Shown piece by piece: positions 36,210 to 61,483 of a stretch of 64,000 nucleotides of DNA. This stretch comes from Raja brachyura (taxonomy: Eukaryota), in contig OY740790.1 of assembly GCA_963514005.1 (NCBI GenBank), forward strand, positions 12,276,001 to 12,340,000. Reading direction: 5' to 3'. The notes below the pieces were generated by a model. The model did no database searches. It saw nothing but the letters and a program-made list of their open reading frames with translations, and was not told where the DNA came from. Position 1 is the first letter of the stretch, and each line of letters starts with the position of its first letter. The position numbers and the translations under genes were made by a program.

Positions 36210-36489
36210 TGACACCTGTACTAATCAAAAATATATCTATCTCTGCCTTAAAAATATCCATTGACTTCACTGCCTCCACTGCCTTCTGTGGCAAAGAATG
36301 CCACAGATTGACAACACACTGACTAAATACATTTCTCCTCATCTCCTTCCTAAAAGAACGTCCCTTAATTCTGAGGCTATGACCTCTATCCTAGACTCTC
36401 CTACTAGTGGAAACATCCTCTCCACATCCACTCTATCCAAACCTTTCACTGTTCTGTATGTTTCAATGAGATGTTTCAATGAGAGGTAC

Positions 36490-36870: not shown

Positions 36871-36874
36871 TCAA

Positions 36875-37618
36875 GTCAAAGTCAAACAAACTTTATTGTC
36901 ATTTATGCAATTCCAAACGCAATTCTGTTGCATTTGGCTCCCTGTGCAACATGATAATTAATAGAAGGATGAAATGGGAAAAAATGGATAAAAGGATAAA
37001 ATAGACAATCGTGGCAGCCCATTACATGGCATTCAGGAGTCTGAATGCAACCGCTGCTGTGCTCTCTTAACTGTTGATGTTATTTGACCAGGTCAGACTG
37101 TTAGTGATCTGCACCCCCAGGAACTTAGTGCTACTGATCACCTCCACATCGCTGTCATTGATGTGAAGTGGTGTGTGACTGTGCCGGTGTTTCCTGTGGT
37201 CGACGATGCCCTCCTTTGTTTTTTCGACATTCAGGATCAGGTTGTTTGTATGCTCCAGTCCACCAGGTTGTTTGCACCAGTCCACCAGTTGTTTCACCTC
37301 CTCCCTGTAAGCCAGCTCATTGTCGTCCCGGATGAGGCCCACCACTGTAGTGTCATCTGCGTACTTCATGATGTGGTTTGTACTAAACCTGGCACAACAG
37401 TCGTGGGTCATCAGGGTAAACAGCAGTGGACTCAGGACACAGCCCTGAGGGGAGCCGGTGCTCAGAGAGATGATGTTAGAGGTGTTGTTTCCAACCCTCA
37501 CTGACTGGGGTCTGTCAGTGAGGAAGTCCAGTAGCCAGTTACACATGGGGGTGCTGAGGCCCAATGGAACCAGTTTGCTTATCAGGTGCTGAGGGATAAT
37601 TGTGTTGAATACTGAACT
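36875..37618 (-). mobile_element. Rex1/Babar-type LINE RT fragment
   Basis: [25 protein letters not shown] and LNVEKTKE motifs. Confidence 0.75.
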
Positions 37619-37620
37619 CC

Positions 37621-40600: not shown

Positions 40601-42136
40601 ATGTTATCCATCCCCATTCATTCAAACACAAGCGTAATCTCCCACCAACTTGTGACTGATGCACACACTTCATGTTCCGGAGAGAACCAGACCCACCTAC
40701 CTCCATGGTTATCGGTGGATTTGCGGTGTCTATTTCCGCCCCCGGTGTTTGGGAGGTAGAGCTGCTGGAGAGCGCGAACTGCGCATTTTTGACGAGGGCC
40801 TGCCTGAGCCTTGCCCTCAAAAAGATCTCTGTCCAAAGTGTTTGGTCTTCGTGCTGCCACCAGCTTCTGTGAATCGTTTGCTGCTGGTGGAAGCGTAGGG
40901 GTGCTGCCGCCGGAATGACGAAGCTCTCGTTGGTGGAGCTCTGATTAGCCCCACAGCTTTCGCCTCGTCATCCAGGTCTTTGACCAGCTTTGGCAGATCT
41001 TCCCCATACAAATAGTTTGGCGGCTGTACGTTACTGGCCCTGCATAATCCCGCAAACTTGGGATTCAGGGCAGGGCGGATGGCATTCTTGCGGAAGCAAT
41101 TAATCTCAAAATGTGCGTTGCACATTAATGCCAGCGCATCTTGTTGCTCATCCGACAGAGAACTTCCATCCTCCGACCTGGCACAGGCTGTGATGCCTGA
41201 AGCTAGCAAGTTCAGGATCCTCTGGAGTTTCACCTCCTGGGTTTTGATGCCCCCACCAATGAAACTCCAGATCGAGCTGTTTACAGCCGGCAGTTGGCAG
41301 GCTTATGGTACCTCATGGATGTTTGCACCATTACCTGCTCCTGGAGCTGATGTGAAGCTAGGTAATTAATGCTTGCCGCCTATTCTTCATCCAGCGGCTC
41401 CCCAATTTGTGATGGTATAGCAAATTTGGATACCATAGCAGGCAATTCTGCTTCCCGCAGCTCGTGCATCGGGGACATACCACCGAATTCCAAGTCAGCT
41501 CAAAACTGACTCCGTATGCTCCCCTCCTCAGAGAGGGAGACTTGATGCAGCCCTGCGCCAGGCATTGCCGCGGGCCCCCGAGACCCACGCTGATATAACT
41601 CCGTTCCTTGGAGTATATCGTGATGCAGTATCCCTTCCATCAGATGCTCCATCCGGGATAGACGTCCGAAGACGCTACCCAATGTAGGGGGCAACCCCTC
41701 CTGGCCTGACTCGTCCGAGTCGATAGGCCTATTGGACTTTTGTTCGGCTTTCCCACCTCTCGGGGTAGCCAAGGTGCTCTCCATAGGAACCAAGTCTGAC
41801 GTCGCTGGCTGCGCCGCCAGCGACTCGGATGGTGAAATCAACGGCCGCCCGCTAACCGCACTCCCGTGATCTTCCTTAGCTGGTCTCCCCGTGGCCCGTC
41901 AGGACTTCACTCTTGATTTTTCCATCACTGTTCGTACTTGAAGCGCTGCAATCAAGAATTAGCGACCAAATGACCTCAGAATAAGTTCGAGAACTTACCT
42001 GTGAATCTTTTAACCTTACAGCTGGAGGAGCGACGCGCCTACCAGCCAGTTGTGGCGCCATGCGTTAGACGTATTGACGCGCATGCGGGCTGGCGGGCTT
42101 CTTCATGTAGTCACTCACGTGACTCTGAAGTAAAAT
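37621..42136 (-). mobile_element. DIRS1-type tyrosine-recombinase retrotransposon, near full length, degenerate
   Basis: gag-like ORFs 40817-41841; RT remnant, RNase H (QTDASALGWG, LELLG, IDNTT, ADTRSR) and methyltransferase-like IDLFASRLN; YR (STRAATTS); inverted termini and internal complementary region 37799-37910. Confidence 0.92.
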
Positions 42137-42669
42137 TAACCATTCCTTAGCCCACTTGCCTCACTAATAAAAATGCTGCTGTCATTTGTGGTAACCATCT
42201 TCGCTATCTATGATACCACCCAGTTTAGTATCATCTGTAAACTTACTAATCAGTTCTTGCACATCCACATCCAAATCATTAATATAAAGTAGCTGCTTGG
42301 TGCTTGTTTACTCTCATGGGAGAATATAGAACTGGAGGGACAGAATAAGACGTTGCCCATTTAAAATAAGGTTTATGGGGGATTCCCTTCTCTCAGAGGG
42401 CCTTGAATCTTTGGAATACCTCAGAGGGCAGCATCATTGAAGACATTCAAGCCCCAGACCGAAAGATCTTTGTTCTGTAAGAGAATGAAGGATAATAGAG
42501 CACTGGAAATGGGGATTCCTATGTGAAATAAGAAAAATGATTATGGGGCAGCAAAGTAGAGCTGAGGTCAAGATAAGATGAGCCAAGAGAGCAAAGGGGC
42601 CTGAAAGGCTGCTGTCAGCCCCATTTCCTCATTTTCTGCTTTGTTTCAGAATTGCAGCGTCTGCAATAT

Positions 42670-43195
42670 ATTAGTTTAGTCCATTAGACACACCGAGTCC
42701 ACACCAGCGATCAATCATCCATTCAAACTAGTTCTGTTTTCCTACTTTCTCAGCCACTCCCAACACATTGGGAACAATTTTACAGAGGCCAAATAACCTG
42801 CAAACATCTTTGGGATTTGTGAGGAAACTGGAGCACCAGGAGGAAACCCAAACAGACACAGACAGACAATACAAACACCGCACAGACAAACACAACACAG
42901 CAGTGCTGAACTACCATCTACCTCATTGGTGACCCTCGCACTATTCTTGATTGGACTTTGCTGGCTTTACCTTGCACTAAACATTAGTCCCTTATCATGT
43001 ATCTATACACTGTAAATGGATCGATTGTAATAATGTATTATCTTTCCGCTGACTGGTTAGCACGCAACAAAAGCTTCTCACTGTACCTCGGCCCACGGGA
43101 CAATAAACTAAACAGACAGCACTCTAGGTCAGGAACGAAACTGGGTCTCTGGCGCTGTGAGGCAGCAACTCTACAATCTGGGCCACTGTGCCACC
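42670..43195 (-). mobile_element. tRNA-derived SINE interrupted by another repeat
   Basis: Same head and core as 31140-31440. Confidence 0.6.
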
Positions 43196-44813
43196 CAAGC
43201 ACTTACAAACTGTGCTTAATATTGCCTCTGCATGTTGCAGGTGATTGTTCCAATGTCCAGGCTTTGTAACTATGGCCACGGTACAGAGGTACAGGTGGGA
43301 ACCAAATCAATGTCGATGCATATCATCTCATTATTGTGGTAATGCCTTTTGCTTTTCTATGGAGTTTGCTTTGCATCGATAAGCTTCTATGATTCCTATA
43401 TCTCGTTTCCCTTTCCCGTGACTTTCAATCTAAAGAAGGGTCTCGACCCGAAACGTCGCCCATTCCTTCTCTCCGAAACGTCGCCCATTCTGCCTGTCCC
43501 GCTGAGTTACTCCAGCATTTTCTGTCTACCCTATTACTAATCTCATCATTGTTCGAGATTCGATCCACTATGGTGGTATCATCTACAAACCTGTAAATGG
43601 AGTTAGAGCAGAATTTAGGAAGCAAAAGTATGTAACCTTATGATGAGTACAAGAGTAAGGATGTCTTTCTGCAATTACAAAGATCTTTAGGAAGATTACA
43701 CGTGGGGCATTATGTTCAGTTTTGTTCTCTGTAACCAAAAGGCATGTTCTTGTGTTAAGTGAGTGAAACAAAAAAATCAGCAGGTTCCAGGAATAGTAAG
43801 TTTTCATTCGGAGGAGATATTGAATAGATTGGACCTGTTTTTCTCGCGAGATTAGAATAAGAGGATGCAGGGAGGATGTTTTCCTTCTCAGGAATTTGAA
43901 CTAGAACAACATTAGATAATTTAGGACTCAGATGAGGAGTAATATTCAGATATTCAGGGAAGGAAGGGATTTATGAATAGTCAGAGAAAATGCGATGGAG
44001 TTAGAAGATCAGCTATGATCTTGATGATTAGCAGAGCAAGCTCAGGGGACAAATGACCCACCCAAAATATTTCCTTTGATCCTCATGCAGAGAAACATAC
44101 AGTGATGCAGTTTGGTGGGCTAGACAATGTGGAATAAAGCATACTGTCCCAAAAGAGGTGCATGAGCAGAGGGACTTGGGGTATAATCTGATTTATGAGG
44201 TGCTCTGGGGGAGAGTTGGAAAAGACACAGTGGGCTAAATGACCCCACCCCACTCTATGCTGCATTCTATACGTGTCCTTCTATAGTCTCTTTGAAACAT
44301 AACACGGAAGGAAACTGATGTGGGCATAGGTCAAGCATTCTGATGATGGTTGAAAGTCGAAAATAAATGGACCCATTGGTCAAAAGAATGAAGGCGATTG
44401 GCAAAATAATTAATAGTGACAAGAGAGAAACGAAACACATTCCGTGTTTGCATCCCAAGAAAGCTGGAAACATTAATGGAAGGAAAGGGTTTGCAAGACA
44501 ATGGGGGAGGAGCAAATGGGATCCAAACGGATGGCCCTCAGTTTGTGCTGGCACTAATCCAATGGCTCTCGTTCGTGCGTAATTTTTTTTTTAAGTGACT
44601 CTGCGCTTCCATAAGTGTCTAGTTACGATTTGCAAGATATGGAATTGGTAAACCTGTGAAAAAAATATGTTTTTTATGTGTGGTTATTTGAACTGTGATG
44701 CCCTTTTTGGTGCATTCCCTTCAGCAACCGGGCGAAGAAAGACCAGGAACCAGTGAACGGTGCGTGGTCAGGAATGCTGGTCTGACGCCAAGGCTCTTCC
44801 AGCCAAAGATTGT

Positions 44814-44819
44814 TATAAA
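44814..44819 (+). promoter_or_regulatory. TATA box, gene B
   Basis: TATAAA at the position homologous to gene A. Confidence 0.65.
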
Positions 44820-44920
44820 GCGGGGCGGCGGAGCTCAGGCTCACAGCTCCAGAGCCTGGCGCCCCTTGCAGAAGTGAAGTCAACCTCGGCTTGTGTGTGT
44901 GTCCGAGTGCAGGCTGAACC

Positions 44921-44981
44921 ATGGCGGGAGGGAGATGCGACCCAGCCGCTACAATTACTCTTGCGTTGCTGCTCGCCACAG
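44921..44981 (+). CDS. Gene B exon 1, signal peptide
   Basis: Identical to gene A exon 1. Confidence 0.8.
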
Positions 44982-47900
44982 GTTTCTCATTTATTTCACA
45001 GCACTAATAATCTGCACTTTCCTCTGATTCGTTTTGTGTTGAATATCAGGCACCAAAGTGTCAATTTTAGTATCTGTTTGTTAAAAGAAATAAAGAGGTG
45101 AACATTTAAAGCGTTCAACTTGTAAGCTTTAAAAAATAATAATAATATTGCCTTTGTGTTGTTTGTAAACTGCAGGATCCGCCTTCAATTTGGAGTTAAA
45201 CCCGTCTGGAAACGTGTGGGCTCGTATCGGGGACTCGCTGGTGTTGAACTGTCTGGCGAAGAGCTGCCCGTCTCCGACCTTCACGTGGAGAATCGGCACC
45301 GATAACCCCCTGGGCGGAACAGTCACAACTCGGGGCTCGGGGCCCACATTCACCATCTCCGCGGCTACCCCGCAGAACGAGCACAAGTACACTTGTTCCG
45401 CAAGATGCGGCGCAGAAGAAAAACGAAAATATGTCAACCTCAATATATTCTGTAAGTATTAACCCATCTCCTGACTGTAAACGTGTTGCAACTTTGTCCG
45501 TCCAGGTAAAAGTTACACAAATACAGGGAACGCTCAACTCATCGTGCAGCCAGGGCCGGCCTTAGGAGGTGCGGGGCCCAATTGGGAAAATTTGGCATAG
45601 AAATATAAATAAAGAATTATAAATGAGTCGCGTGTCGTGAGTAACATGACAATTCGGGGGAGAGTTCCTTTCACAGCGTGTGGGGCGTCTAGCCAGGGGT
45701 AAAGGTGCGAGGAGGGCAGGAGCGTTGAGAAGGAGAGGGTCGGGTTCATGCCAGTAACTCGCTCACTCAGCGCTGCCACGGCGCTCCGGGCGCGGAGCCA
45801 CCGCATTGTGGCCGGGGAGGGAAGCAGCTCTCGTGGCTACGAGCGGCCTCCATCACCGGGCAGCGGAACCGACTGCCACCTCAGCGCCTTCTCCCGGCCA
45901 GCTCACCTCTGGCAGTGGTCTCCGTCTGAACAGTGGGGGGACCAGCTCAAGAGCAAAGATCGTAGAGCGGAGCGGGTCAGCGGGTGATGGATAACATCAC
46001 AGCGGGCGGTGGAGCTTACTCCTGCATCAGCGCGATCAAGGGATCAATTGAGGTTACTCGCCCTGACATATGGAGTAAGCTCCACCGTCCGCTATCCTGT
46101 TATCCATCGTCCGCTGACCCGCTGGATGATCCCCGGTTGAACCCTTCTTCTCAACCCTCCTGCCCTCCCCGCAACTTTACCCCTGGACAGACTCCCCACA
46201 CGCTGTGAAAGGAACTCCCCCCCCCCCCCCCAGCAGCGCGGTCCTTTTACAGCCGCTTCCCACTTTACAGCCGCTTCCCAACAGTTGCTCGCAACGTTCT
46301 TGATGTTGCTGTACTGAGGGATAACAAAGTCTATCTTTTTTGGCTAACAACCTAACCTTCGGCCTCCAAGATGTAGGTACATTTTCTAGCAATGTTACAA
46401 CATTTTGAGATTTAAAAAATCAAGTCTGCAATTTATCCCATCAGATAAAGCATAAAAAGAAGTTTAATTTGACACCTAATTCATATCACATTCATTCAAT
46501 GTGATCATGGCTGATCATCCACAATCAGTACCCCGTTTCTGCCTTCTCCCCATATCCCCTGACTCCACTATTTTTAAGAGCCCTATCTAGCTCTCTCTTG
46601 AAAGCTTCCAGAGAACCCACCTCCACCGCCCTCTGAGGCAGAGAATTCCACAGACTCACCACTCTCTGTGAGAAAAAGTGTTTCCTTGTCTCAGTTCTAA
46701 ATGGCTTACTCCTCATTCTTAAACTGTGGCCCCTGGTTCTGGACTCCCCCAACATTGGGAACATGTTTCCTGCCTCTAGCGTGTCCAAGCCCTTAACAAT
46801 CTTATATGTTTAAATGAGATCCCCTCTCATCCTTCTAAACTCCAGAGTTTACAAGCCCAGCTGCTCCATTCTCTCAGTGTATGACAGTCCCGCCATCCCA
46901 GGAATTAACCTTGTAAACCTTCGCTGCACTCCCTCGATAGCAAGAATGTCCTTCCTCAAATTAGGGGACCAAAACTGCACACAATACTCCAGATGTGGTC
47001 TCACTAGAACTCTGTACAACTGCAGAAGGACCTCTTTGCTCCTATATTCGATTCCTCTTGTTATAAAGGCCGACATGTCATTTCTTAGCGCTAATGGCAG
47101 TTACTTGGGAAACGTGGTCTTCTTCTTCGAGTCCGTTGCAATCTCAGATGTCGTTCTGCCAGTATCTGGCGCAGGTCACAGCTGGTCGGGTCGGTTCAGC
47201 CAGGTCCTGGTGGCTGCACTGGGGGGCATCGTCACACTCCAGTAGGTGGGACATTGTCTGTACTGCTCCACAGCTACATGTGTCTTCTGCCTGGTAGTTC
47301 CATGCTTTCATAAGTGCTTTGCACCTCCCCTGCTCCACTCGTAATCTGTTGAGGGTCTTCCAGGTTGGCCATGGGAGGTCGTGCCCGCTGGCGAGGCATT
47401 CAGTCAAAGTGATTCTTCTCTCCATCCAGTCGTGGGCTCGTGTGTTGAGCTGGTTCCATTCATCTTTCCAGATGTTGGTCCTTGCTGTTTCTTTGGTTGT
47501 CTGGAGAGGTGGGACTGTCTGCAAGAAACTGGCTCTGGATTTCAGTCAGGGTGGAGGTGCTGTGTGTCCGTGCAGGGGTGCCTGGTATCGATCTCCTGTG
47601 CTCTCCGCTCATCTTGGGTGACGATGGATCGTCTGATATGGGGGGGGGGGGCAATACCAGCCAGGGCATAGTGGCACGGGACTGGCGTTGTCTTTATGCA
47701 TCCCGTGATAATGCGGCAGGTGTCGTTGAGGGCTGTGTCAACCAGTTTGGTGTGGTGGGAGCGGCTCCAGCTTGAGCACGCGTGCGTATTCAGCTGTGGA
47801 GAAGCACAGGGCTAGGGCAGTTGCACGGATGGTTGGTGGATCAGCGCCCCACTTTGAGTTTACCAGTTTGCGCAGGATGTTGTTGCGAGTGTTGACCTTG

Positions 47901-50900
47901 GCTTTGGTGTTCTGAAGGTGGGTTTTGAAAGAGAGTGTCCTGTCGAGTGTGACTCCGAGGTACACGGGGTGGGAGTGGTTGGAGAGTTTGTGGCCATCCC
48001 ATGAGACGCTCAGTTGTTTTCCTGCATCTCGATTTTTAAGATGGAAGCTGCGGAGTTGGGTTTTTGATGGGTTGGGTTTCAGGTGGTTGTTATTGGAGTA
48101 GGTTGTCATCTCTTGGAGGGCGCTTTCCAGGACAGACTCGATCTTCTGGAAGTTCTCCTGTTGGGTGGTGATGCAGAGGTCATCAGCATAGATGAAGCGG
48201 TGGCATTGTGAGGGAAGTGGTTGGTCGTTGGTGTAGATGTTGAAGAGGAGGGGGGCCAGTACGCTGCCTTGTGGTAGGCCATTCTTTTGGGCTTTCCATT
48301 TGCTCTTCTTGTCATTTAGTTGAACGAAGAGTGCCTGTTGTTGAGAAGGCTTTTGATGACTTGGCACAGGTCGAGGTCACCAGTCATGTCAAAAAGTTTC
48401 CTGATCATGGTGTGGTGCTGGACAGTGTCGTAGGCAGCGGTGAGGTCATGAAAGCTGCTCCGGTGATGAGTTTGCACTCAAAACCGTCCTCAATGTGTTG
48501 GGTGAGGTTCAGTAGCTGCCCGGCACAGGAGCAGCCAGGGCGGAAGCCAGCTTGATCTTTAGTAAGCTTGGAGTCTATAAGTGGCATAAGGCGTTGGAGT
48601 AGTAGCCTCTCGTAGAGCTTGTAGGTGATGCAGAGGAGGGAACTGGGTCTGTAGCTCTTTGGCGATGATGGGTCCTTTCCAGGTTTGGGAATTGCGACAG
48701 TCTTGGCCTTTCTCCATACAGGTGGGGTTGTTTTCTGTGCCATGCAGGAGTTCAGCATTGCTAGGAGCCAGGTCTTTGCTTTAGGTCCCAGGTGCTGGAT
48801 CATTTCCGTCAGTACATCACCGATTCCTGCAGCTTTCCAGGTTTCAGCATGCTCATTGCAGCTTCGAGTTTTTTTTAAAAAATTATATATTTTTATTAGC
48901 CATACATATTACAAATAATATAACAATTTTTTCAGATATAATTAATGCATCTTTCCAAAATTATATAAACATTACCAAACCATGTATATAGGCCTCCATT
49001 TTTTTATTATAATATATAGAGACAAGTATATAAATCTGAAATTAAACATTTTTGTTTGATCTTCCCACTGGGTACTTATTGAGTTTCAATGCCGAGCCCA
49101 GCTACCCCTTCATATAATCAGTGAATGGAGACCATATTTGTTCAAAAAGTTCAAGTTTATCCATTAGGATAAACCTAATTCTCTCCAGTTGTAATGTCTC
49201 CAACATTTCCACTGTCCACATTTCAATTGTAGGGGTAGCTTCGAGTTCTTCTAGGTCGAAAGGCTTGGTGAGAGTGCTGGCTGGTTGTAGGCGGTCTGTT
49301 ACCGCTGTCTGGCGGTATTCTCCTGTGGGTCTGCGCCGGTTTTGGCTACGACCGTTTGCCACCAGCTGTGCTGCAACTGAGTTTGCTGTGACTGTTGTGA
49401 GCGTGGGCGGTGTGGTATGGTCTTCACCGAGGCAGCGGATTGTGGCCCATGCCTTCCTGCTGTTATTGGTCATGTTGGTGTTTTCTATCAACTCCTTCCA
49501 GACTTGCCTTCGCTCCTCCCCGCCTGTGTTCTTCAGGATCTCTCCGAGTTCCATGGTGGTGGAGGAGAAAGGGTCCTCGTGGTTTGCCCTGTGCTAGGCT
49601 TTCAGTAGATCGCTGGATGTTTCCGACAGCCCGGGGATGTACTCGGTCTGGCATCCTCTTGGTCTATGTTGCCTGGCTGACCTTTTCAGCAGTTCTGTGA
49701 ACATGGTATAGTTGTTGGGGTGTGATGGAATGCTGGGGATGGAGTCTTCGATCTCCTGTTGGAATGACAGCCAGTCGGCGTCACGCAGATTGAACCTTCT
49801 GCGGAAGGGGACGGTTGTTGCTTGGAGAGCGGATGGGATGGTTATGGTGATTGGCCGGTGTTGCGTATGGGGGATAGGGTCCAGGACCTCTTTCACAGCT
49901 CTGGATGATAGTTCGCTGCTCACACAAACAAGGTCTGGGTTATATCCTTGTTTCCATCTGGCACTGTGGAAAGATTTTGCCAGTTTGGCGTCACGGATCA
50001 GGGTCAGGTGTTTCGACTGGAGCCAGCTTTCGACTTCATCTCCATCTTGATTGTTCACTTCATAGCCCCACAATGAGCTATGGGCATTGAAGTCCCCAAT
50101 GCTAATGTGGTATTTCCACTTGCATCTGTCTGGCAGTTCAGAGTGGAGGAACGGACTTTTGGGGGGTTTATACACTGATGTGACAGAGATGTTTGGGAGG
50201 GCAACTGTGATGGTTTCCATTTGCCCTTTGGTGGTGTGGGTGCAGACCTCTTCCATCGCGAGGTTTGGTCTGCTGAATACAGCTGACCCATACTGCCTGT
50301 CTCGGATCTCGGCCACCAGCTTCATTCCAGGGATGGCTGGTCGGTGTTGTGTAGGGCCGGTGTGGGTTTCCTGCATGCACACTATGTTGAAGTGTTTGGC
50401 CGCTGTCGCTAGTATGTCTGCCTTGCATCTGGAGAAGCCTTCAATATTGATTGACAGTGCAGGCCCCGAGGAGGGCGAGTGTCTGCGGTGCTTCACCATC
50501 GTCATCTAGTAGATTACTTGGGTAAGTATACAGATATTGGCCTACTGGTCTGCAACTAGACTGCAACAACCCGGTCTAGGAATAGCTACTTCCCCACAGC
50601 CATCAGGCTATTAAACTTGGCTCGGACAAAACTCTGAACATTAATATCCCTCCATCTGTTATTTGCACTTTATTAATTTATTAATTCATGTGTGTGTTTA
50701 CTTATATAATTGTAGTCAATGCCTACTATGTTCTGTTGTGCTATACAAAGAAAGAATTTCATTGTCCTGTCAGGGACACATGACAATAAACTCTTTTGAC
50801 TTTTGACTTTGACTTTGGTGGTAATAATATGAGATTATACCATTCAGTGTTTCCCAGGCTGCACCACGGGGAGGTTTCTGTATTAGCAGCCCGGGAAACG

Positions 50901-53890
50901 TGGTAACTCGTGAAGATTTTTCAACATATACTCGGGATGTAAAATTATGATACTTTTTAACACGTAGTCATACCATAGTAGCTCGTGAGTTTACCGTAGT
51001 AGGACCTGGTGTCCTATTGTATGTTCATGATGGAAATAAGAATACTCTGTATATTCATTACCTTTGAATTGTAGTGTTATGTAATCCTCCCATAATTTCT
51101 GAGTTCCATTTCACAATATCTATCAGACATAGAGAATGTTGCAAGGTAATATCTTGCCCAAACTCAGTTGTATCTTTCTATCTCAATAAATATCACAGAA
51201 TATGCCATTGTTTCAGCCAGATTATGACAAAATATAGAATGTAGATTATTTGTTATCAGTCACCCCATCCCAGTAACAACAGTACTCAAAGAAGAACATT
51301 TGGTTTACTAATTTACGAGCATGTACCAAACAGAGTCCGTTGATCCATATCCAACAAACTATTGTGATAATTGCATAAAGGGTATTATTGTCTAAGAAAT
51401 TTGGTGTGGAATGATAATCCATCTCAGTATTCATTTAGGCAAGTCCCAAGCCATAGATACTTTGCCACTATTTGGTTACAGGCAGTCGAGGGCAGCCATA
51501 GGGAATCAGATTCGCTGACTAGTCGTTTTAATTGGCTCATTGGAGTTTTCAGGACCAAGTAAAAGCGACCGATAATGTAAAATGCCTGCTAAACATTATT
51601 ATCGGTTGTCTGGCTTCTTAAAAGTGTCTCCACTCCTTCCTCCCCCTCCCCCTCCCCCTCCTCCTCCACTGATCCATCTCTCCCTCCTAACCCCATTCTC
51701 CTGCCTTCTCCCCATAACCTCTGACACCCGTACTGATCAAGAATCTGCCTTAAATATATCCATTGCCTTGGCCTCCACAGCCGTCTATGGCAATGAATTC
51801 CGCAGATTCACCATCCTCTGACTAAATCGATGAGCACCTTGGGCGCTGTACATTCCACCGTGAATCCCCGTTTGATTCCTGAATCCATGTGTCGTTGCAG
51901 CTCTGTCCGACACACTCATCGTGGAGACAGTGGGCAGTCTGGAAGTTGGCCAGAGAGGCTCTGTGAGATGTATGGTCCCCAAAGTCTACCCCGCTCATGT
52001 GAAGGTGGAGTGGCTGAAAGGGACAACGGTGCTGAAGACCGACAGCTTCCACAACTACACAGAGGAAGAAACGGCGATGAACTTCACCTACGAACTGACG
52101 CCCGAATTGCGAGACTCGGGACAAGAGCTGACATGCCGAGTGCAATTACTCACGGAGAACCAACCACGCAAGGCCGAGGGGACTCTAACGTTACAGGTTC
52201 ACTGTAAGTATGGATACAGTGATATAACATTGAGAAAGGAGTCGCAGTTATAGACGTTGTCTGGACAATGGTTTAATTCGCCCGCCTTTAATGTACTGAA
52301 TGATCCCATCTCCTTCCACAGATGCTCCCACAGGGATTGACATTACTGCGGAGCCCTCTGCCACAGTGAGAGAGGGTCAGGGGACAATCACCAAGGAGGT
52401 GGAAATCCATGTTCAAGGTGCGTGGGTTTCACGATTGTAATTTTACTATCACTGTTATAGGAAAGACGTGGTCCAGCTGGAAAGGGTTGAGAGAAGATTT
52501 GGAACTGGAACTCTTCTTCATGCTCGAGGGAAGTTCCCGCATACTCGCGCCTCAAGGGCCTGTCCCACTTGCATGTGATTGCGTGCGTTTGGCGCGACCA
52601 AATGGAAGCGGAGTTCACGCGAAGTTCGCGCCAAGTATGCGCTAAGTTCGCGCGTGACGTCATTTGCGTCATGCTTACCAATCAGCTGGGCAGGAGGCGG
52701 GCCAACTGGATTTGGGCGTCGCACGGCGTCGGGCAGTGACGTCGTCACGCAATGCCACGCCGGGTGGTGACGTCATCGCGCAACGCCACGCGCTAGGCGT
52801 ACGCCATCAAGACTCTGCGTATGACCACAATTCGCCTGCGTACCACTGCCAGAATGTCTGAGCCGCGCGCAATGTCGGGACCAGCCCCGCACAACTCCGC
52901 GCTTCTACGTAGTACCAGCCCCCCGCGGCTATACGGTGCCCGTACGCCTCAAGCGACCACGAGGTCGCGTAATGTTCCGCGTGTTGAAAAATGTTCCGCG
53001 TGTAAAAATTGGTCGGCATGGTTCTTTTGAACTCTTAGTGCTGTAGAGTGGGGTCGCTATGTAGTAACAGGCAGTCGAGGGCAGCCGTAGGCAATCTCCT
53101 TCGCTGACCGGGCATTTTAATTGGCTCATTGGAGTTTTCAGGACCAAGGAAAACGGACCAGTAATGTTAAATGCTCGCTAAACTTTATTATAAGTTGTCT
53201 AGCTTCTTAAAAGTGTCTCCATTCCTTCCCCCCCCCCCACCACTTTTCTTCCCTTCTCTCTTCTCCCCCCCCCACCCCCCCGCACTCTTTAAAGGACTTA
53301 CCGTACACTGTGCAGCCGTCTTTTACCTTCTTGTTCATCACGGGTGTGCATTTCAGACAGCGCTCCCCCGCTTTCCATGCCCCCGCCTTTGCGATATGTG
53401 TGCGCGGTCGGTTGATGCAGCTCTTGGTTTTATCGTTGACGGTAGTTCCAGCTTGAGGTTTTTCAGGCGAGTGCCCTCGATCTTGAAGGTCGAAGACAGT
53501 CGCTGAAAGGTCGCGTCAGTGGGACAGGCCCTTTATTAGACAGGTACATGGATAGGACAGATTTGGAGGGACATGTACTAGTGTAGCTGGGACATGATGG
53601 CTGATGTGGGCCAGTTGGGCTGAAGGGCCTGTTTCCACAATGTATCACTTTATGACTATGACTCTATGTTTCTTTGCACTGTTTTGGCTGAACATTTAGC
53701 AATTCATTAATTTCTCATGCCTCTGTTCTCAGGTATCCCCAGGGACACCACTCTCTCCATCAGTTTCAGCAACACAACCCAGCAGATGAACAGCACCAAA
53801 CTCCGGGTTAAATCGGGTGGTGCCACGATGACAGCTTCGCCAACAGTCTGTCCCTTCATCTTTTTTTTTGTTATTTCTAGTGTGATTTAA
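44921..53890 (+). CDS. Gene B: truncated VCAM1-like paralog, predicted 297 aa (SP-D1-D2-stalk-hydrophobic C-terminus); could alternatively be a pseudogene
   Basis: Exons 44921-44981, 45176-45451, 51901-52203, 52322-52417 and 53733-53890 total 894 nt in one open frame with canonical splice sites. Confidence 0.55.
45176..45451 (+). CDS. Gene B exon 2, Ig D1
   Basis: Differs from gene A by two S>P changes. Confidence 0.82.
45551..46490. mobile_element. hAT-like non-autonomous element remnant
   Basis: Starts CAGGGCCGGC; interior shares GC-rich inverted segments with 32735-34041; end approximate. Confidence 0.5.
46492..47085 (-). mobile_element. CR1 3' fragment
   Basis: RPHLEYCVQFWSP and FFSQRVVSLWNSLP motifs. 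Confidence 0.88.
47118..50510 (-). mobile_element. Single-ORF non-LTR retrotransposon (Vingi/Ingi-like; clade tentative), frameshifted
   Basis: APE (MQETH, GDFN, PDL), RT (QAGFR, GLPQGSVLAP, YADD), WGAD...ALALCFSTAEY, C-terminal CSCG..QT..H..C and (AAG)n tail. Confidence 0.8.
48871..49236 (-). mobile_element. L1/Tx1-type 3' fragment nested in the LINE
   Basis: TSD agcttcgagtt at 48860 and 49237; A-rich tail with AATAAA; W..EM..LERIRF...IWSPF C-terminus. Confidence 0.7.
51901..52203 (+). CDS. Gene B exon 3, Ig D2
   Basis: Intact; E>K and L>F relative to gene A. Confidence 0.82.
52322..52417 (+). CDS. Gene B exon 4, D3 with in-frame 171-nt deletion
   Basis: YAPTGIDITAEPSATVREGQ-GTITKEVEIHVQ; both Cys lost, both splice sites kept. 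Confidence 0.65.
52554..53533. mobile_element. MITE-like DNA element (possibly PIF/Harbinger-type)
   Basis: TIR AAGGGCCTGTCCCACT at both ends; partial related copy near 51470-51660. Confidence 0.65.
53733..53890 (+). CDS. Gene B putative last exon: collapsed D7 plus repeat-derived hydrophobic tail
   Basis: GIPRDTTLSISFSNTTQQMNSTKLRVKSGGATMTASPTVCPFIFFFVISSVI*; acceptor ttctcag intact, original donor displaced by an insertion. Confidence 0.5.
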
Positions 53891-53951
53891 AAGTTTGTGT
53901 TAATGTTCTCTGTTTTGTTTTATTTGGGGGGTAGGGTCGGGGGAAACATTT

Positions 53952-54410
53952 TAGACAATAGGTGCAGGAGTTGGCCATTCGAGCCAGCACCGCCATTCAA
54001 TGTGATCATGGCTGATCATCCCCAATCAGTGCCCCGTTCCTACCTTCTCCCCATATCCCCTGACTCCGCTATTTTTAAGAGCCCTATCTAGCTCTCTCTT
54101 GAAAGCATCCAGAGAACCTGCCTCCATCGCCCTCTGAGGCAGATAATTCCACACACTCACCACTTGTTGTGAGAAAAAGTGTGTCCTTGTCTCCGTTCTA
54201 AATGGCTTGCTCTTTATTCTTAAATTGTGACCTCTGGACTCCCCCAACATCGGGAACATGTTTCCTACCTCCAGCGTGTCCAAATCCTTAACAATCTTAT
54301 ATGTTTCAATGAGATCCCCTCTCATCCTTCTAAACTCCAGAGTGTACAAGCCCAGCTGCTCCATTCGCTCAACATATGACAGTCCCGCCATCCAGGTAAT
54401 TAACCTTCAA
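53952..54410 (-). mobile_element. CR1 3' fragment nested in an unclassified repeat (53811-54969)
   Basis: GLSYVERMEQLGLYTLEFRRMRGDLIE motif. Confidence 0.85.
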
Positions 54411-55268
54411 TCACTTACCTTGCCGGATATGCAATTGTTTTCCGGGTCATCTCTGGTCGCACTGCAGCCTGACATAATTGAGCTGGAGGCATGGACTTAC
54501 CATCAGAGCTGATTCCTTGCCTGGGATTGACGCTCCAATCCACAGCCTGTGGACTTTAACATCAGGGGCTTGTAGCCTCGGGAGAGACCGAGTCGGGAAG
54601 CTCCAAAACCGCACGGCGTTGGACTAGCCCCGGCCCGGGGTCCGATCGCCCGTCGCGGGGAACTGACATCTCCCGACGAAGGAGCTTGATCGCCCCGACA
54701 CGGAGGTCCCACTGCCGGCTACGGGAGTCAAGATCGTCCCATAAACCGAAGGCTAAAGGCCCCCGACTGCCGGAGATCAAAGAAGCGAAGTGATTGAACT
54801 TTTTGTTGCTTTCCATCACAGTGCAGAATGTGGAAGAGTCACTGTGGTGGATGTTTATGTTAAAATGTTATTTTGTGCGTTTTGTTGCTTTTTATTAGTA
54901 TGACTTTACGGCAAATCAAAATTCCTCGTATGTTACAATATATACTTCATAAAGTAAGTGAATATGAGTATGTATGGAAATTAATGGGAAATATACAGGA
55001 ACTGAATCATTATAAATTGCAATAATCTATGATTGTAACAATCATTAATAAACATCATGGGATGCATGGATCGGGTATATGCACAGAGTCTCTTGCCCAG
55101 AGTTGGTGAATCGAGGACCAGAGGACAAAGGGTGAAGGTGAAAGTGAAGGGAAAAAGATTTAAGAGTAATCTGAGGGGTAACTTTTTCACACCAAGGGTG
55201 GTGGGTGTATGGACCAAGCTGCGAGAGGAGATAGTTGAGGCAGGGACTATCCCAACATTTAAGAAACA

Positions 55269-57092
55269 CTAGACTAAGTGGGCTGGTACCCCAGTGGGGG
55301 AGGTGGCTTTCAGTTGCGCTAGTATGGGTGTTGTGGGCCGAAGGGACTGGTTTCCAGAGGGCTAGTATGGACATTGTGGACCGAATAGATTCTTGGGCTG
55401 GCAGCTCAGTCACTCAGGCCTGGTGGGCTGGCAGCTCAGAAATGGCCAGAAATTCTGCACAAAACAGGTGAGAGACTCGGTGAGAGAGAAGGGGGAGAGG
55501 GTGGAGATTCAATATTAGATATTTTTCTGCATATCACAGGAATGAAGGAGGAAAGTCTATCCTGGCCTGGATCTCACAGGGAGCCAGTGAACGGAGGGAG
55601 AAAAATACTGGGTTGAGGTTTAATACTTGCAGGGGGAATACTTACTGATGGGCTGAAAGGACTCCTAGTCTAGTACAGGCCTGATGGGCCGAAGGGTCTC
55701 TTAAAAAATAACTTGAGTGAAATCTCAGTGAAAGGCACTTTTTCTGGACTTTCCTTGGCCTGGCACAGGCCCTTTGGGCCAAAATGCTCCTCCTGGGCTA
55801 CTACGGGCATTTGGGGCAAAAGGGGCTGGTTTCTCAGCTAATAGATGCACTGTGGGTTGAAATTAGTGGTTTCGGGCAGGCCAAACAGCACATTTCATTT
55901 CCATTTCAATTTCCAGTACAGGGCAGGCCAAACTACTCATTTCATTTCATTTCCATTTCCATTTCAAGCACACGGCAGGCCAAACAACTAATTTCATTTC
56001 CATTTCCATTTCCATTTCCATTGCCGTAGCAAGCATAGGGCAGGCCATATAACTAAATTCATTTTCATTTAATTTCATTTCCATTTCCATTGCAGTTTCA
56101 AGCACAGGCCAGGCCAACAACTTCTTTCATTTTAAATTAATTTCCATTTCCGTTTCAAGCACAGGGCAGGCCAAACAGCTCATTGCATTTTCATTTCCAT
56201 TTCCATTTCCGTTTCAAGCACAGGGCAGGCCAAACAGATCATTGCATTTTCATTTCCATTTCCATAGCAGTTTCAAGCACAGGACAGGCCAAACAGCTCA
56301 TTGCATTTTCATTTCCATTTCCATTGCAGTTTCAAGCACTGGGCAGGCCAAACAGCTCATTGCATTTTCATTTAATTTCCATTTCAATTGCAGTTTCGAG
56401 CACTGGGCAGGCCAAACAGTTAATTGCATTTTCATTTAATTTCCATTTCCATTGCAATTTCGAGCACTGGGCAGGCCAAACAGCTTTTTGCATTTTCATT
56501 TCCATTTCCATTGCCGTTTCGAGCACTGGGCAGGCCAAACAGCTCTTTGCATTTTCATTTCCATTTCCATTGCCGTTTCGAGCACTGGGCAGGCCAAACA
56601 GCTCATTGCATTTTCATTTAATTTCCATTTCAATTGCTGTTTCGAGCACTGGGCAGGCCAAACAGCTAATTGCATTTTCATTGAGGGCTAACAAATCATT
56701 TATTGCAAGTACATTGCAGACTCAGACCAGTTGATTCACAGCTTAAAATTGTGAATTCACTTAAAATTCACAGTTGTATCCTCTCCCTCGCGATCATCCA
56801 AAGTGACTGTCTCACGTCCAGGCATCTGGGGTTTTATATTCCTTCCCCCCCCCCCCCCCCCCATAGTTACCTTCATCATGGTGATTAGCAGGCGAGAGGA
56901 CCAATCAGCTGATCTCAAGATTTTTTAAACACTCATAACTTTTTTATTTTTGATCAATTGGAAAAATCCTCGGAGGAGGAGGACTGAGTAAGATGGCCAA
57001 AAATCATAGCGATATATAGGGTAAGGTTTTTTCTAAAATCAATATACAGCGCAGACAGGAAGTGGTCAAGATGAGACTTTTAGTTATATAGA
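55269..57092 (-). mobile_element. Non-autonomous Helitron, second subfamily with a ~60-bp minisatellite (55870-56680)
   Basis: Minus strand TCTATATAACTAAAAGTC...CTTAGTCTAG; splits a CR1 at aagaaaca^tttagacagg (A^T, no TSD). Confidence 0.8.
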
Positions 57093-57309: not shown

Positions 57310-57604
57310 GTAGCCCCAGGGACACCACTCTCTCCAACACCCCTGCTGCTGTGAAGGAAGGAGACAGGGTCACGTTCAGCTGCTCAACCCAGTCCAACCC
57401 CCCTGCCCAGCTTGTACTGAGGAGGCAGTCATCGAGCGGATGGAGCGAGCTGGACTCAGAGAATGGGACATTGACAATCTGTAATTGTCATTAATATTGA
57501 CACAGCCCAGCTGATGCAGGGTCTGTATCAACGTGAGGCCACTAATGCCCTGGGGGGGGGGGGGGGGGGGGGGCAGACCAGTAGCAACAAACTCCAGGTT
57601 CAAG
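57310..57604 (+). pseudogene. Gene B dead D7-like exon
   Basis: In-frame TAA at 57492, small insertions, poly-G run. Confidence 0.85.
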
Positions 57605-59310: not shown

Positions 59311-60595
59311 GGTAGCCCCAGGGACACCACTCTCTCCATCACGCCCTCCGATGTGAAGGAAGGAGACAGGGTCACGTTCAGCTGCACAACCCTGTCCAAC
59401 CCCCCTGCCCAGCTTGTACTGAGGAGGCAGTCATCGAGCGGATGGAGCGCGCGCGCGCTAGACTCCGAGAATGTTTAAGAAGGAACTGCAGATGCTGGAA
59501 AATCAAAGGTAGACAAAAATGCTGGAGAAAATCAGCGGGTGAGGCAGCATCCACGGAGCGAAGGAAATAGGCAACGTTTCAGGTCGAGACCCTTCTTCAG
59601 ACATGTGAGGGTTGGGGGGACGGGAAGAAGAAAGGAAGAGGCGGAGACAGTGGGCTGAGGGATAGCTGGGAAGGGGAGGAGAAAGCAGGGACTACCTGAA
59701 ATTGGGGAAGTCAATGTTCATACCGCTGGGGTGGGCCTCACTCTGACCATGGAGGAGGCCCAGGACAGAAAGGACGGATTCGGAATGGGAGGGGGAGTTG
59801 AAGTGCTGAGCCACCGGGAGATCAGGTTGGTTATTGCGAACCGAGCTGAGGTGTTGGACGAAGGGATCGCCAAGCACCGATGTAGAGCAGTTGACACCTA
59901 GAGCAGCGGATGCAATAGATGAGGTTGGAGGAGGTGCAGGTGAACCTCTGCCACACCTGGAAAGACTGCTTGCGTCCTTGAATGGAGCCAAGGGGGGAGG
60001 TAAAGCAACAAGTGTAGCATTTCCTGCAATTGCAAGGGAAAGTGCCAGGGGAGGGGGTGGTTTGGGTAGGAAGGGACGAATGGACCAGGGAGTTATGGAG
60101 GGAGTGGTCTCTGCGGAAAGCAGACGGGAGGAGATGGGAAGATGTGGGCAGCGGTGGGATCACATTGGAGGTGGTGAGAATGTTGGAGGATTACTTGTTG
60201 TTTGTGATGGCTGGTAGGGTGGAAGGTGAGGACAAGGGGGACTCTGCCCTTGTTACGAGTGGGGGGATGGGGAGTGAGAGCAGAGTTACGTGGTATAGAA
60301 GAGATCCTGGTGAGAGCCTCATCTATAATAGAAGAGGGGAACCCCCATTCCCTGAAGAATGAGGACATCTCCGATGCCCTGGTGTGGAACACCTCATCCT
60401 GGGTGCAGATGTGGCGTAGACGGAGGAATTGGGATGGAGTCCTTACAGGAAGCAGGGTGGAAGAAGTGTAGTCCAGATAGCCATGGGAGTCAGTGGGTTT
60501 ATAGTAGATGTCGGTCAGTAGTCTATCACCTGCGATGGAGATAGTGAGGTCTAATAGATAGTCAGATAGACTCTGAGAATGAGACATTGACATTG
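59311..60595 (+). pseudogene. Gene B dead D7-like exon split by Penelope
   Basis: Exon sequence at 59311-59473 and 60567-60595; acceptor near 58866 mutated and separated by an insertion; 3' part deleted. Confidence 0.8.
59474..60566 (-). mobile_element. Penelope-like element, 5'-truncated
   Basis: RT end (LDL...DIYYKPTDSHGYLDY), GIY-YIG (NLIYCIRC..C..LYIG); 15-bp duplication tagactcYgagaatg at 59459 and 60567. Confidence 0.85.
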
Positions 60596-60842
60596 CCAGA
60601 GGGGGCTTTAATTTAACAACTTACGTGAAAGTGTAACTAATTGCTGCCATCCTTTGGCACAGGACTGGAGAGACTTTCTAGCTTTTTGTGCCTAATTCCT
60701 TGAACAGAAACTTGAGCTCACAAGTCATGGTGATCATTATAAATTGCAATCATCTATAATAGTAACAATCACTAATAGACATCATGAGATGTATGGATCG
60801 GGTAGATGCACAGAGTCAATAGACATGCGTTTTCCCCCCCAT

Positions 60843-61025
60843 CACCAAGCCTGACTGTTTGGGCTCATCCTTCCAAACTGGTCGATGAAGGAGAAAAGGT
60901 CACCATTGGCTGCACCATTCATAACATCCACTTAGCCAGTTTCACCTGGAAGAAACTAGTGAACAACAGTGAAAATGTGCTGTCCTCCAATAACAACAAC
61001 TTTACAATCCTTGAAAAATACACCA
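60843..61025 (+). pseudogene. Gene B dead membrane-proximal Ig exon, truncated
   Basis: Homolog of 23382-23566 with the same CAT in place of the acceptor; cut by a MITE. Confidence 0.75.
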
Positions 61026-61483
61026 ATTTTCGGCGACAGTGGGCTTGATGCCAATGAGCGTAGCTTGACGTCTGCTGACGTAGGTGCTGTCATAGGTTGT
61101 CCCCAGGATGACGTAGGTTGGCGCCAGGTAACGTAGGTTGGTGCTGGTGCTGACTTCGTTGAATTCCATTGGCGACTACCAACGTCAACCCACTTCAACC
61201 GACGACAGGTACCAGCGACTGAATTGTCTGAAGTTGTCTTTAGTTGTCGCAGACAGGGTCGTAGTTTGTCGTGGATGGACGTAGGTTGTAGGTGTGGTCG
61301 CAGGTGGACGTCCTAATGGGTCGCCGGTTGTTGGTAGCTTGCAGTAGCTTGATGTTGACTAGGTGGTAGGTTGTCGTAGACATTGCCGTGGCGGGGTCCA
61401 GTCGCCGGTTTTTCAGCCACCAGTTACGATTGTGCCAGTCGCCAGCAGTCGCCGAAAAAATCACCTATGTGGGACAGGCCCTT
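61026..61483. mobile_element. MITE fragment, AGGGCCTGTCCCAC family
   Basis: Right TIR gtgggacaggccctt; interior similar to 30030-30130. Confidence 0.6.

What the first reader, a model, noticed from the sequence alone, without database searches (positions are those of the whole stretch)
52322..53890. Gene B looks re-engineered into a two-domain, possibly GPI-anchored mini-VCAM rather than simply dead
Seen: three separate deletions (171 nt in D3, two in the first D7 exon) all keep frame and leave the acceptors intact. They remove three Cys, and the fourth codon TGC has become AAC, so no unpaired Cys is left in the stalk. Two N-glycosylation sequons absent from gene A appear (NTT, NST). The frame runs into an inserted repeat and ends ...RVK-SGG-ATMTASPT-VCPFIFFFVISSVI*. 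Known: GPI signals have small omega residues, a spacer and a terminal hydrophobic stretch, and mouse VCAM-1 has a short GPI-anchored splice form. Inference: independent origin of a GPI-type VCAM by gene duplication plus repeat exonisation. Downstream exons are dead and no TM exon is seen in the window. Three in-frame deletions would occur by chance about 1 in 27 times, so this is suggestive only.
Basis: partly seen in the sequence, partly recalled or inferred. Interest (0 to 1): 0.85.

Follow-up and report, generated by a model that had tools for sequence, protein, structure and literature searches.

The report
Truncated, transcribed VCAM-like gene copy
A cut-down second copy of a VCAM-1-like adhesion gene keeps an open 297-codon frame that ends in a repeat-derived, lipid-anchor-like tail. 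Its last exon is spliced into RNA in a related animal, but nothing yet shows the protein is made or kept by selection.

Summary
Gene B is a tandem copy of a VCAM-1-like gene. Three deletions (171, 33 and 150 nt) all keep frame. One Cys codon TGC has become AAC, and two new N-glycosylation sequons appear. The frame runs 78 nt into a 1155-nt repeat insertion and stops at 53888-53890.

New here:
- The insertion sits exactly between the exon's last codon and its original donor, now at 54968.
- In one public run that behaves as RNA (related organism), a contig starts exactly at acceptor 53733, carries 28 unmatched letters upstream, and reads past the weak donor and the stop.
- A DNA run of another organism holds the gutted exon plus tail without any indel.
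- A loose GPI rule is met by only 0.25-1.1% of comparable open frames in this window.

Against a selected function:
- All 14 coding changes seen are replacements.
- The likeness of D1-D2 to gene A looks like gene conversion.
- B lacks gene A's kappaB-like promoter site.
- No common poly(A) signal follows the stop for 850 nt.
- The exon upstream of 53733 in the RNA is unidentified.

My odds: transcribed decaying copy 0.45; GPI-type mini-VCAM 0.30; other short form 0.20.

The parts
44814..44819 (+). TATA box of gene B. It also marks the 5' edge of the tract that is about 99.5% identical to gene A (44812-45549).
   Evidence: Upstream of it, A and B are only about 86% alike, with indels.
44921..44981 (+). 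Exon 1 coding part: ATG in a good Kozak context, 20 codons plus 1 nt, signal-peptide-like. Identical to gene A.
45176..45451 (+). D1 exon (I-set Ig). It has the VCAM-1 type double disulfide, and GTDNPL aligns with human QIDSPL.
   Evidence: PDB 1VCA/1VSC/1IJ9, E 7.5e-17. Pfam I-set, 1e-11. Two differences from A, both Ser to Pro.
45550..51668 (.). 6.1-kb repeat insertion in intron 2 of B, where A has 485 nt. LINE endonuclease and RT open frames lie on the minus strand.
51901..52203 (+). D2 exon, intact.
   Evidence: Matches human VCAM-1 D2, E 1e-5. Pfam C1-set / ICAM D2. Two replacement differences from A against 14 in 350 nt of flanking intron.
52322..52417 (+). D3 remnant of 96 nt. The 171-nt in-frame deletion junction lies at 52381/52382, and both splice sites are kept.
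52488..53535 (.). About 1-kb repeat insertion in the intron between the D3 remnant and the last exon.
   Evidence: Very high read depth.
53733..53812 (+). Remnant of a D7-like Ig exon: 80 of 264 nt after losses of 33 and 150 nt. TGC has become AAC, and the NTT and NST sequons are new.
   Evidence: Acceptor 53733 is used in RNA-like run X1.
53813..53890 (+). Insertion-derived coding tail of 25 codons plus TAA: small residues, an 8-aa spacer, then a 14-aa uncharged hydrophobic end.
   Evidence: X1, X7 and X9 contigs run through it.
53813..54967 (.). 1155-nt composite repeat insertion that separates the exon from its original donor.
   Evidence: A's intron homology resumes at 54968. (LINE fragment 53943-54393, minus strand).
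54954..54973 (+). Displaced donors: a consensus GTAAGT at 54954 and the original GTATGT at 54968. Using either would leave the stop far upstream of a junction.
57310..57604 (+). Dead D7-like exon with 31 extra nt, frameshifts and stops.
59312..59478 (+). Truncated D7-like exon with a 6-nt insertion. Homology is lost after about 59475.
60806..61048 (+). Last Ig-like exon of B. It has the same frame break at an A5 run (61014-61018) as gene A.

Best explanation
Gene B is an old tandem duplicate of a VCAM-1-like gene that is decaying from its 3' end but is still transcribed and spliced. Shown: its downstream Ig exons are broken. Two Ig exons have been reduced to 96-nt and 80-nt stubs. A 1155-nt repeat insertion has pushed the donor of the second stub 1.1 kb away, so the acceptor at 53733 still works and the transcript reads on into the repeat. 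Inferred: repeated gene conversion from gene A keeps the core promoter, exon 1, D1, D2 and the splice sites nearly identical to the working gene. That is why the copy still makes spliced RNA and still shows an open frame. On this reading the in-frame deletions, the lost Cys and the GPI-like tail are coincidences, or leftovers of an earlier working stage, and the product is not maintained by selection today.
For: - Decay: exon 57310 has 31 extra nt and stops, the exon near 59312 is cut off, and the last Ig-like exon has a frame break. There is no TM exon in 53.7-64 kb.
- Conversion rather than selection: the tract from the TATA box into intron 2 has 4 substitutions in about 735 nt, while the sequence just upstream is 86% alike. 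The D2 exon has 2 differences in 303 nt against 14 in 350 nt of flanking intron (Fisher p 0.009). None of the about 3 expected silent changes is seen, so both silent and replacement sites are homogenised.
- No constraint visible: all 6 A-B coding differences are replacements, including two Ser to Pro in B's D1. All 8 independent changes in the last exon among three organisms are replacements. Divergence in organism E is 5/156 in that exon against 2/105 in the intron. NST becomes NSI in organism A.
- Promoter: gene A has a palindromic kappaB-like site (2867-2877) 26 nt upstream of its TATA box. B has none within 400 nt.
- 3' end: none of 12 common poly(A) hexamers lies between 53801 and 54739. 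A consensus GTAAGT (54954) and the original donor (54968) lie downstream.
X1 depth over 52379-52475 is fully explained by an A-type contig.
- No protein in the public collections carries the tail.
Against: - Three in-frame deletions have p = 1/27. The GPI-like tail has a base rate of 0.25-1.1%. The one remaining unpaired Cys codon was changed by two adjacent substitutions.
- The exon is spliced and read through in run X1 at a contig depth (55.8) close to that of A-type D2 contigs (68-70). That is not what a transcript degraded by nonsense-mediated decay would be expected to show, although the tool warns that contig depth is a poor measure.
- The gutted exon, the junction with the insertion and the T9 run are kept without indels in organisms D, E and probably A.
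- 14 of 14 replacement changes is itself more than neutrality predicts (p 0.007-0.02). A-type D2 also shows 4 replacements to 1 silent change among organisms, so fast protein evolution is a trait of the family and is not proof of death.
Confidence: 0.45

Rival explanations
1. Gene B is a working short VCAM made of a signal peptide, D1, D2, a 58-aa glycosylated stalk from the two exon stubs, and a repeat-derived C-terminal GPI signal. The GPI transamidase would cleave at the Ser-Gly-Gly-Ala small-residue cluster. This would put a two-domain alpha4-integrin ligand on the outer leaflet of the membrane, or allow it to be shed.
For: - D1 keeps the VCAM-1 fold signature and the acidic C-D loop motif, and D2 matches VCAM-1 D2.
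- Three in-frame deletions with all splice sites intact.
- No unpaired Cys outside the part that would be cleaved off.
- The tail passes the small-residue / spacer / hydrophobic-end rule in the window and in both variant organisms. Base rate is 0.25-1.1%.
- No substitution falls in the 14-aa hydrophobic end in either organism.
- A stop inside the last-used exon would escape nonsense-mediated decay (established rule).
- Mouse makes a three-domain GPI-anchored VCAM-1 (PMC2193422).
Against: - The GPI rule is home-made and post hoc. No trained predictor was run.
- There is no poly(A) signal for 850 nt, and strong donors lie downstream.
- The kappaB-like promoter site is lost.
- No purifying selection is detectable anywhere in B, and the NST sequon is lost in organism A.
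- The 14-residue hydrophobic end is at the short end of the range for GPI signals (general knowledge).
- Protein databases are blank for the tail.
Confidence: 0.3
2. The exon at 53733 is a real alternative 3' end, but of a different transcript than the one modelled. It could be joined to an intact D3 in related organisms, where the 171-nt deletion may be absent, giving a three-domain short form like the mouse one. It could instead be joined to a D7-like exon or to gene A read-through transcripts. The product may be secreted or membrane-attached.
For: - The 28 upstream letters of X1 record 5 did not lie on 52390-52417. The window's B has two private changes there (52397, 52405), so an ancestral or A-type D3 end would fall below the 95% threshold.
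- The 171-nt deletion lies inside a tract converted about as recently as these organisms diverged, so it may be private to the window's species.
- X1 record 3 runs from D2 through a full-length D3 as one contig.
- Gene A shows no TM exon and a broken last exon in this window.
Against: There is no direct view of the 28 letters. A 28-nt piece with one mismatch might simply not have been seeded. Read-through from A would have to cross 20 kb of repeats and B's own 5' exons.
Confidence: 0.2
3. Assembly artefact: gene B, or its deletions, come from a mis-join or a collapsed haplotype.
For: No independent contig bridges the 171-nt deletion junction. Only A-type contigs were laid on D2-D3 in X7 and X9.
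Against: - B differs from A by kilobase insertions and by 14% divergence upstream.
- X7 contigs match 53626-53978 exactly. X9, from another organism, holds the same gutted exon and insertion junction.
- Contigs drop the rarer variant, so the absence of a B-type D2-D3 contig proves nothing, as the tool itself notes.
Confidence: 0.03

Closest known systems
Mouse three-domain GPI-anchored VCAM-1 (alternatively spliced, cytokine-inducible form; Terry et al. 1993, as cited in PMC2193422)
   Same: A short VCAM with the N-terminal integrin-binding domains followed by a short novel C-terminal peptide in place of the TM and cytoplasmic exons. The proposed attachment is by GPI.
   Different: The mouse form is a splice variant of the single VCAM1 gene. 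It uses an extra exon after D3 and keeps three folded domains. Here it would be a separate duplicated gene with only two foldable domains, a stalk made of two gutted Ig exons, and a tail taken from a repeat insertion. GPI attachment is shown for mouse and not shown here.
Human VCAM-1 D1-D2 (PDB 1VCA, 1VSC, 1IJ9)
   Same: B's D1 aligns end to end (E 7.5e-17) with both disulfides, and the Asp-containing C-D loop motif is in register. D2 aligns to residues 99-178 (E 1e-5).
   Different: Identity is low outside the core. B carries two Ser to Pro changes in D1 compared with its neighbour, gene A. Integrin binding is untested.
Transcribed unprocessed (duplicated) pseudogenes kept similar to the parent gene by gene conversion
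   Same: It is a tandem copy with dead downstream exons and mosaic identity to the parent (99.5% and 97.7% tracts inside 83-86% flanks). It is still transcribed and spliced, and no purifying selection is seen.
   Different: The surviving 297-codon frame has no stop or frameshift. Its three deletions are all in frame, and it ends in a rare GPI-like architecture.
Exonisation of transposable-element sequence as a new 3' terminal coding exon
   Same: The last 25 codons and the stop come from an inserted repeat block that displaced the donor.
   Different: The 3' end of the RNA (poly(A) site) was not found, so 'terminal exon' is inferred from read-through only.

Membership tests
VCAM-1 family (IgSF alpha4-integrin ligands) | N-terminal I-set domain with the extra D1 disulfide and an acidic C-D loop motif (human QIDSPL) | tested here: met
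   E 7.5e-17 to 1VCA/1VSC/1IJ9 over residues 1-88. GTDNPL is in register, and both Cys pairs are present.
VCAM-1 family (IgSF alpha4-integrin ligands) | Second domain of the VCAM/ICAM D2 type | tested here: met
   VCAM-1 residues 99-178, E 1e-5. Pfam ICAM1_3_5_D2 at its cut-off, and C1-set.
VCAM-1 family (IgSF alpha4-integrin ligands) | Multi-domain ectodomain followed by a TM segment and a short cytoplasmic tail | tested here: not met
   In gene B, D3 and the next Ig exon are stubs and the later exons are dead. There is no TM-like exon in 53.7-64 kb.
VCAM-1 family (IgSF alpha4-integrin ligands) | Binds alpha4beta1 / alpha4beta7 | not testable with these tools
   Needs an adhesion assay.
GPI-anchored protein | N-terminal signal peptide | tested here: inconclusive
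   Exon 1 encodes 20 residues with a short hydrophobic core, identical to gene A. No signal-peptide predictor is available.
GPI-anchored protein | C-terminal signal: small omega / omega+2 residues, a 5-10 residue spacer, and a terminal uncharged hydrophobic stretch with no cytoplasmic residues | tested here: met
   My own loose rule. The window and both variant tails pass, against 0.25-1.1% of control open frames. The rule is post hoc, and the 14-aa tail is short.
GPI-anchored protein | Positive call by a trained predictor (NetGPI, PredGPI, big-PI) | not testable with these tools
   None is installed. It would also need the joined model, which I did not build.
GPI-anchored protein | Release by PI-PLC or presence of anchor components | not testable with these tools
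   Bench experiment.
Unprocessed pseudogene | Disabling lesion (stop, frameshift or lost splice site) in the coding path | tested here: inconclusive
   There is none in the 297-codon path. However, two Ig domains are destroyed, the donor is displaced and the downstream exons are dead.
Unprocessed pseudogene | Evolution without purifying selection | tested here: inconclusive
   14 of 14 coding changes are replacements, and the last exon is no slower than the intron. This is compatible with neutrality or with positive selection. The numbers are small, and gene conversion blurs D1-D2.
Unprocessed pseudogene | No stable, correctly spliced transcript | tested here: not met
   X1 record 5 is spliced at 53733 at a depth near that of gene A contigs. 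It comes from a related organism, and the run's RNA nature is inferred from contigs that stop at exon borders.

The most novel reading that the evidence does not exclude
An independent origin of a short, GPI-type VCAM. A duplicated VCAM-1-like gene was pared down by in-frame loss of two Ig domains to D1-D2 plus a glycosylated stalk. It acquired its membrane-anchor signal and stop codon from a repeat insertion that turned an internal exon into a terminal one. It is expressed at levels near its full-length neighbour and evolves fast at the protein level. This would be a convergent counterpart of the mouse GPI-anchored VCAM-1 splice form, reached by gene duplication instead of splicing.
Probability: 0.3. 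Interest if true: 0.6.

Novelty: new member of a known kind. Interest (0 to 1): 0.45.

Why it matters
If the short form is real, it would show that vertebrates have arrived at a lipid-anchored, N-terminal-domains-only VCAM at least twice by different genetic routes: splicing in mouse, and duplication, domain loss and repeat exonisation here. It would also be a clean example of a transposable-element insertion supplying a GPI signal. If it is a transcribed relic, it is still a useful caution. Gene conversion from a working neighbour can keep the promoter core, signal peptide, two domains and splice sites of a dying copy pristine, so that the copy yields spliced RNA and a long open frame that annotation pipelines would call a gene. 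Either way, the locus appears to be part of a multi-copy, fast-evolving VCAM-like cluster. That cluster includes a neighbour with nine tandem Ig exons and deserves proper annotation with long-read cDNA.

Tried and rejected
- Protein searches for the 51-aa last-exon peptide came back blank: the word-indexed collection and 1.84 billion representatives. The three weak hits were unrelated Ser/Thr-rich repeats.
- Searches with the D3-remnant open frame and the D2 open frame were also blank. Given the length filter and 50% clustering, these blanks say little.
- I looked for another copy of the tail DNA (53805-53960) in the window and found none. Likeness to the SINE-like element at 54650-54960 was not above shuffles, and likeness to the one after 57605 was borderline.
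- I scanned for TM-like exons downstream of A and B and found nothing convincing.
- I tried to read Terry et al. 1993 (PMC46838); it is not held.
- I rejected 'purifying selection keeps D2 intact', because silent sites are as depleted as replacement sites.
- I rejected 'haplotig', because of the kilobase insertions and 14% upstream divergence.
- All searches were exon by exon, by reference.
- Complex prediction and structure prediction were not used. No claim here rests on binding or on a fold.
Full report
**The locus**

The window holds two tandem copies of a VCAM-1-like gene on the + strand.

Gene A has these parts:
- a TATA box at 2895 and an ATG at 3008
- D1, D2 and D3 exons
- nine near-identical 264-nt Ig exons (acceptors 5640 to 22212)
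- a last Ig-like exon near 23330-23639

Gene B starts with a TATA box at 44814 and an ATG at 44921. It is followed by D1 (45176-45451), D2 (51901-52203), a 96-nt D3 stub (52322-52417) and the exon at 53733.

Family identity is clear. B's D1 aligns end to end with human VCAM-1 D1 (PDB 1VCA/1VSC/1IJ9, E 7.5e-17). Both disulfides are present and GTDNPL is in register with QIDSPL. D2 aligns with VCAM-1 residues 99-178 (E 1e-5). Pfam gives I-set and C1-set/ICAM-D2. The repeats suggest a cartilaginous fish to me, but I did not test that.

**The observation**

- The D3 deletion is exactly 171 nt, with both splice sites untouched.
- Against each of A's 264-nt exons, the exon at 53733 has lost a net 33 nt and 150 nt. 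The first Cys codon TGC is AAC, and NTT and NST are new.
- With phase-1 junctions the split codons read GGA, TCT, TAT and GGT. The path counts 297 codons to TAA at 53888-53890. I counted exon by exon and did not build the joined sequence.
- The 'inserted repeat' can be stated precisely. Homology to A ends after 53812 and resumes at 54968 with A's intron start, GT(A/T)TGTATGGAAATTA. So 1155 nt (53813-54967) were inserted between the exon's last codon and its donor.
- The block holds a minus-strand LINE fragment, and read depth jumps by three orders of magnitude within 53834-53930.
- The downstream exons are dead, and no TM-like exon follows.

**Mosaic history**

B is not a young copy.
- Upstream of the TATA box, A and B are 86% alike with indels. 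The intron before 53733 is about 83% alike to A's repeat units.
- Two tracts stand out. The first runs from the TATA box into intron 2 and has 4 substitutions plus a (TG)n length change in about 735 nt.
- The second is 51669-52487, at 97.7% identity. Inside it the D2 exon has 2 differences in 303 nt against 14 in 350 nt of flanking intron (p 0.009).
- Both D2 differences are replacements, and none of the roughly three expected silent differences is seen. That pattern fits a recent short conversion tract better than purifying selection.
- The 171-nt deletion lies inside this tract, so it is younger than the conversion.

**Reads (one call)**

Run X1 (organism A) is listed as 'RNA?'. It behaves as RNA.
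- Its contigs stop exactly at 51901 and 52203.
- The 118-nt intron 52204-52321 has no cover beyond what the exon edges explain.
- Its D2-D3 contigs are A-type. Record 3 runs from D2 through a full-length D3.
- Record 5 (294 nt, depth 55.8) lies on 53733-54001. It starts exactly at the acceptor, with 28 letters left over.

The orientation convention can be checked on X9 record 25, which stops at the deletion edge 52381. By that convention, the 28 letters of record 5 lie upstream of 53733. So the acceptor is used, and the RNA reads through the weak donor (exon end 53816), through the stop and into the repeat. A low-depth contig (4.2) covers the unspliced boundary.

X1 depth in that bin (26.8) is fully explained by the A-type contig. 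B in the window has two private changes there (52397, 52405). An ancestral-type D3 end would therefore fall below the 95% threshold, so the upstream partner remains unknown.

Run X7 (organism D) matches 53626-53978 exactly, including the T9 run. Run X9 (organism E) covers 53628-53907 with seven substitutions and no gap. The gutted exon, its junction with the insertion and the frame are therefore shared by at least two, probably three, organisms about 2-3% apart.

**Selection**

- The five X9 and four X1 substitutions inside the last exon amount to eight independent events. All are replacements: Thr to Ser or Ile, Leu to Phe, Arg to Trp or Gln, Thr to Ala, Ser to Leu, Pro to Arg.
- All six A-B coding differences are also replacements.
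- Fourteen of fourteen is more than the 70-76% expected without selection (p 0.007-0.02).
- A-type D2 among organisms gives four replacements to one silent change.
- So there is no sign of constraint. There is a weak hint that the whole family evolves fast at the protein level.
- None of the changes falls in the 14-residue hydrophobic end, but that is not significant.
- Both variant tails still pass my GPI rule, though organism A loses the NST sequon.

**How unusual is the tail?**

I wrote a loose rule with four parts:
- a small omega residue, and G/A/S at omega+2
- a 5-11 residue spacer that is not hydrophobic
- at least 10-14 uncharged residues with a high hydropathy mean
- that stretch running to the very C-terminus

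It is met by 4-18 of 1611 stop-to-stop frames of at least 25 aa in this window (0.25-1.1%). The rule was written after seeing the tail, so the real rarity is somewhat less.

**Points against a tidy gene**

- Gene A has a palindromic kappaB-like site, GGGGAGTCCCC, 26 nt upstream of its TATA box. B has nothing of the kind within 400 nt, because the 20 nt between the shared flanks are replaced. In mammals VCAM1 induction depends on kappaB sites at that position (established knowledge).
- None of twelve common poly(A) hexamers occurs between 53801 and 54739.
- A consensus GTAAGT at 54954 and the original donor at 54968 could splice the 1.2-kb read-through into the dead exon 57310. That would expose the stop to nonsense-mediated decay.
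- No public protein carries the tail. The length filter and clustering make that weak evidence.

**Weighing**

Under a pure-relic model the coincidences multiply to about 1e-4 or less: 1/27 for frame, about 1/100-1/400 for the tail, and perhaps 1/4 for loss of the last Cys. This locus was picked out of a very large scan, however, and each feature was noticed after the fact.

The RNA result was a forward prediction that held. A transcribed relic with an intact acceptor and a displaced donor would give the same picture.

My odds:
- transcribed, decaying copy: 0.45
- another real short form (different upstream exon, three-domain in relatives, or secreted): 0.20
- assembly artefact: 0.03

**Comparison with what is known**

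Mouse VCAM-1 has a cytokine-inducible three-domain GPI-anchored splice form (PMC2193422, citing Terry et al. 1993). VCAM1 is reported from fishes onward (PMC7916592). I found no paper on duplicated or GPI-type VCAM in cartilaginous fishes.

The scan's only other note on this genome that bears on the locus is the nine-exon array of gene A. The scan has not seen this on other DNA.

**Limits**

- Only the one read-laying run used contigs, not raw reads.
- The organisms are coded.
- The 171-nt deletion lacks independent support.
- No trained GPI or signal-peptide predictor was available.
- The joined model was neither searched nor folded.

Noticed in passing
window 2867-2877 versus 44790-44813: Gene A has a palindromic kappaB-like site, GGGGAGTCCCC, 26 nt upstream of its TATA box. 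In gene B the about 20 nt between the same flanks are replaced, and no kappaB consensus lies within 400 nt. The 99.5% A/B identity tract begins exactly at the TATA box.
   Followed up: partly
window 23330-23639 (gene A) and 60806-61100 (gene B): The last Ig-like exon, the counterpart of mammalian D7, has a frame break at an A5 run (23553-23557 and 61014-61018). It reads Tyr-Lys-Val-Lys where the second Cys should be. Both copies share this, so gene A's own 3' end may be damaged or that exon may be skipped.
   Followed up: partly
window 23500-43400: No convincing TM/cytoplasmic exon for gene A was found between its last Ig-like exon and gene B. The interval is mostly LINE and other retroelement open frames. 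Gene A's true 3' end is open.
   Followed up: partly
window 51798-52487 as laid in runs X7 and X9: The A-type D2-D3 contig of X7, the organism that matches the window exactly elsewhere, differs from the window's gene A at 52051, 52083, 52174 and 52255. Its depth is about 3 times that of the single-copy B contigs, and about 7 times in X9. This suggests further copies or alleles of the D2-D3 unit outside the window.
   Followed up: no
window 5640-22475: Nine tandem 264-nt Ig exons with identical acceptor and donor motifs lie in 1.3-2.4-kb repeat units in gene A. They are the subject of a separate note of this scan (s1-881190).
   Followed up: partly
window 51901-52203: Among organisms, A-type D2 shows four replacement changes (His to Arg, Asn to Asp removing a sequon, Thr to Met, Ala to Val) and one silent change. 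This hints that this VCAM-like family evolves fast at the protein level (codon assignment).
   Followed up: partly
window 45550-51668: A 6.1-kb insertion sits in B's intron 2, where A has 485 nt. It carries LINE endonuclease (49594-50505) and reverse-transcriptase (47738-48803) open frames on the minus strand.
   Followed up: no
window 38140-41841, minus strand: A string of long open frames (up to 315 aa) looks like a retroelement with RNase H / integrase-like parts, in the A-B interval. It was not examined.
   Followed up: no
window 55784-56734: A tandem-repeat block downstream of the insertion translates to a monotonous His/Phe-rich periodic frame. I avoided it when choosing the stretch for read laying.
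   Followed up: no
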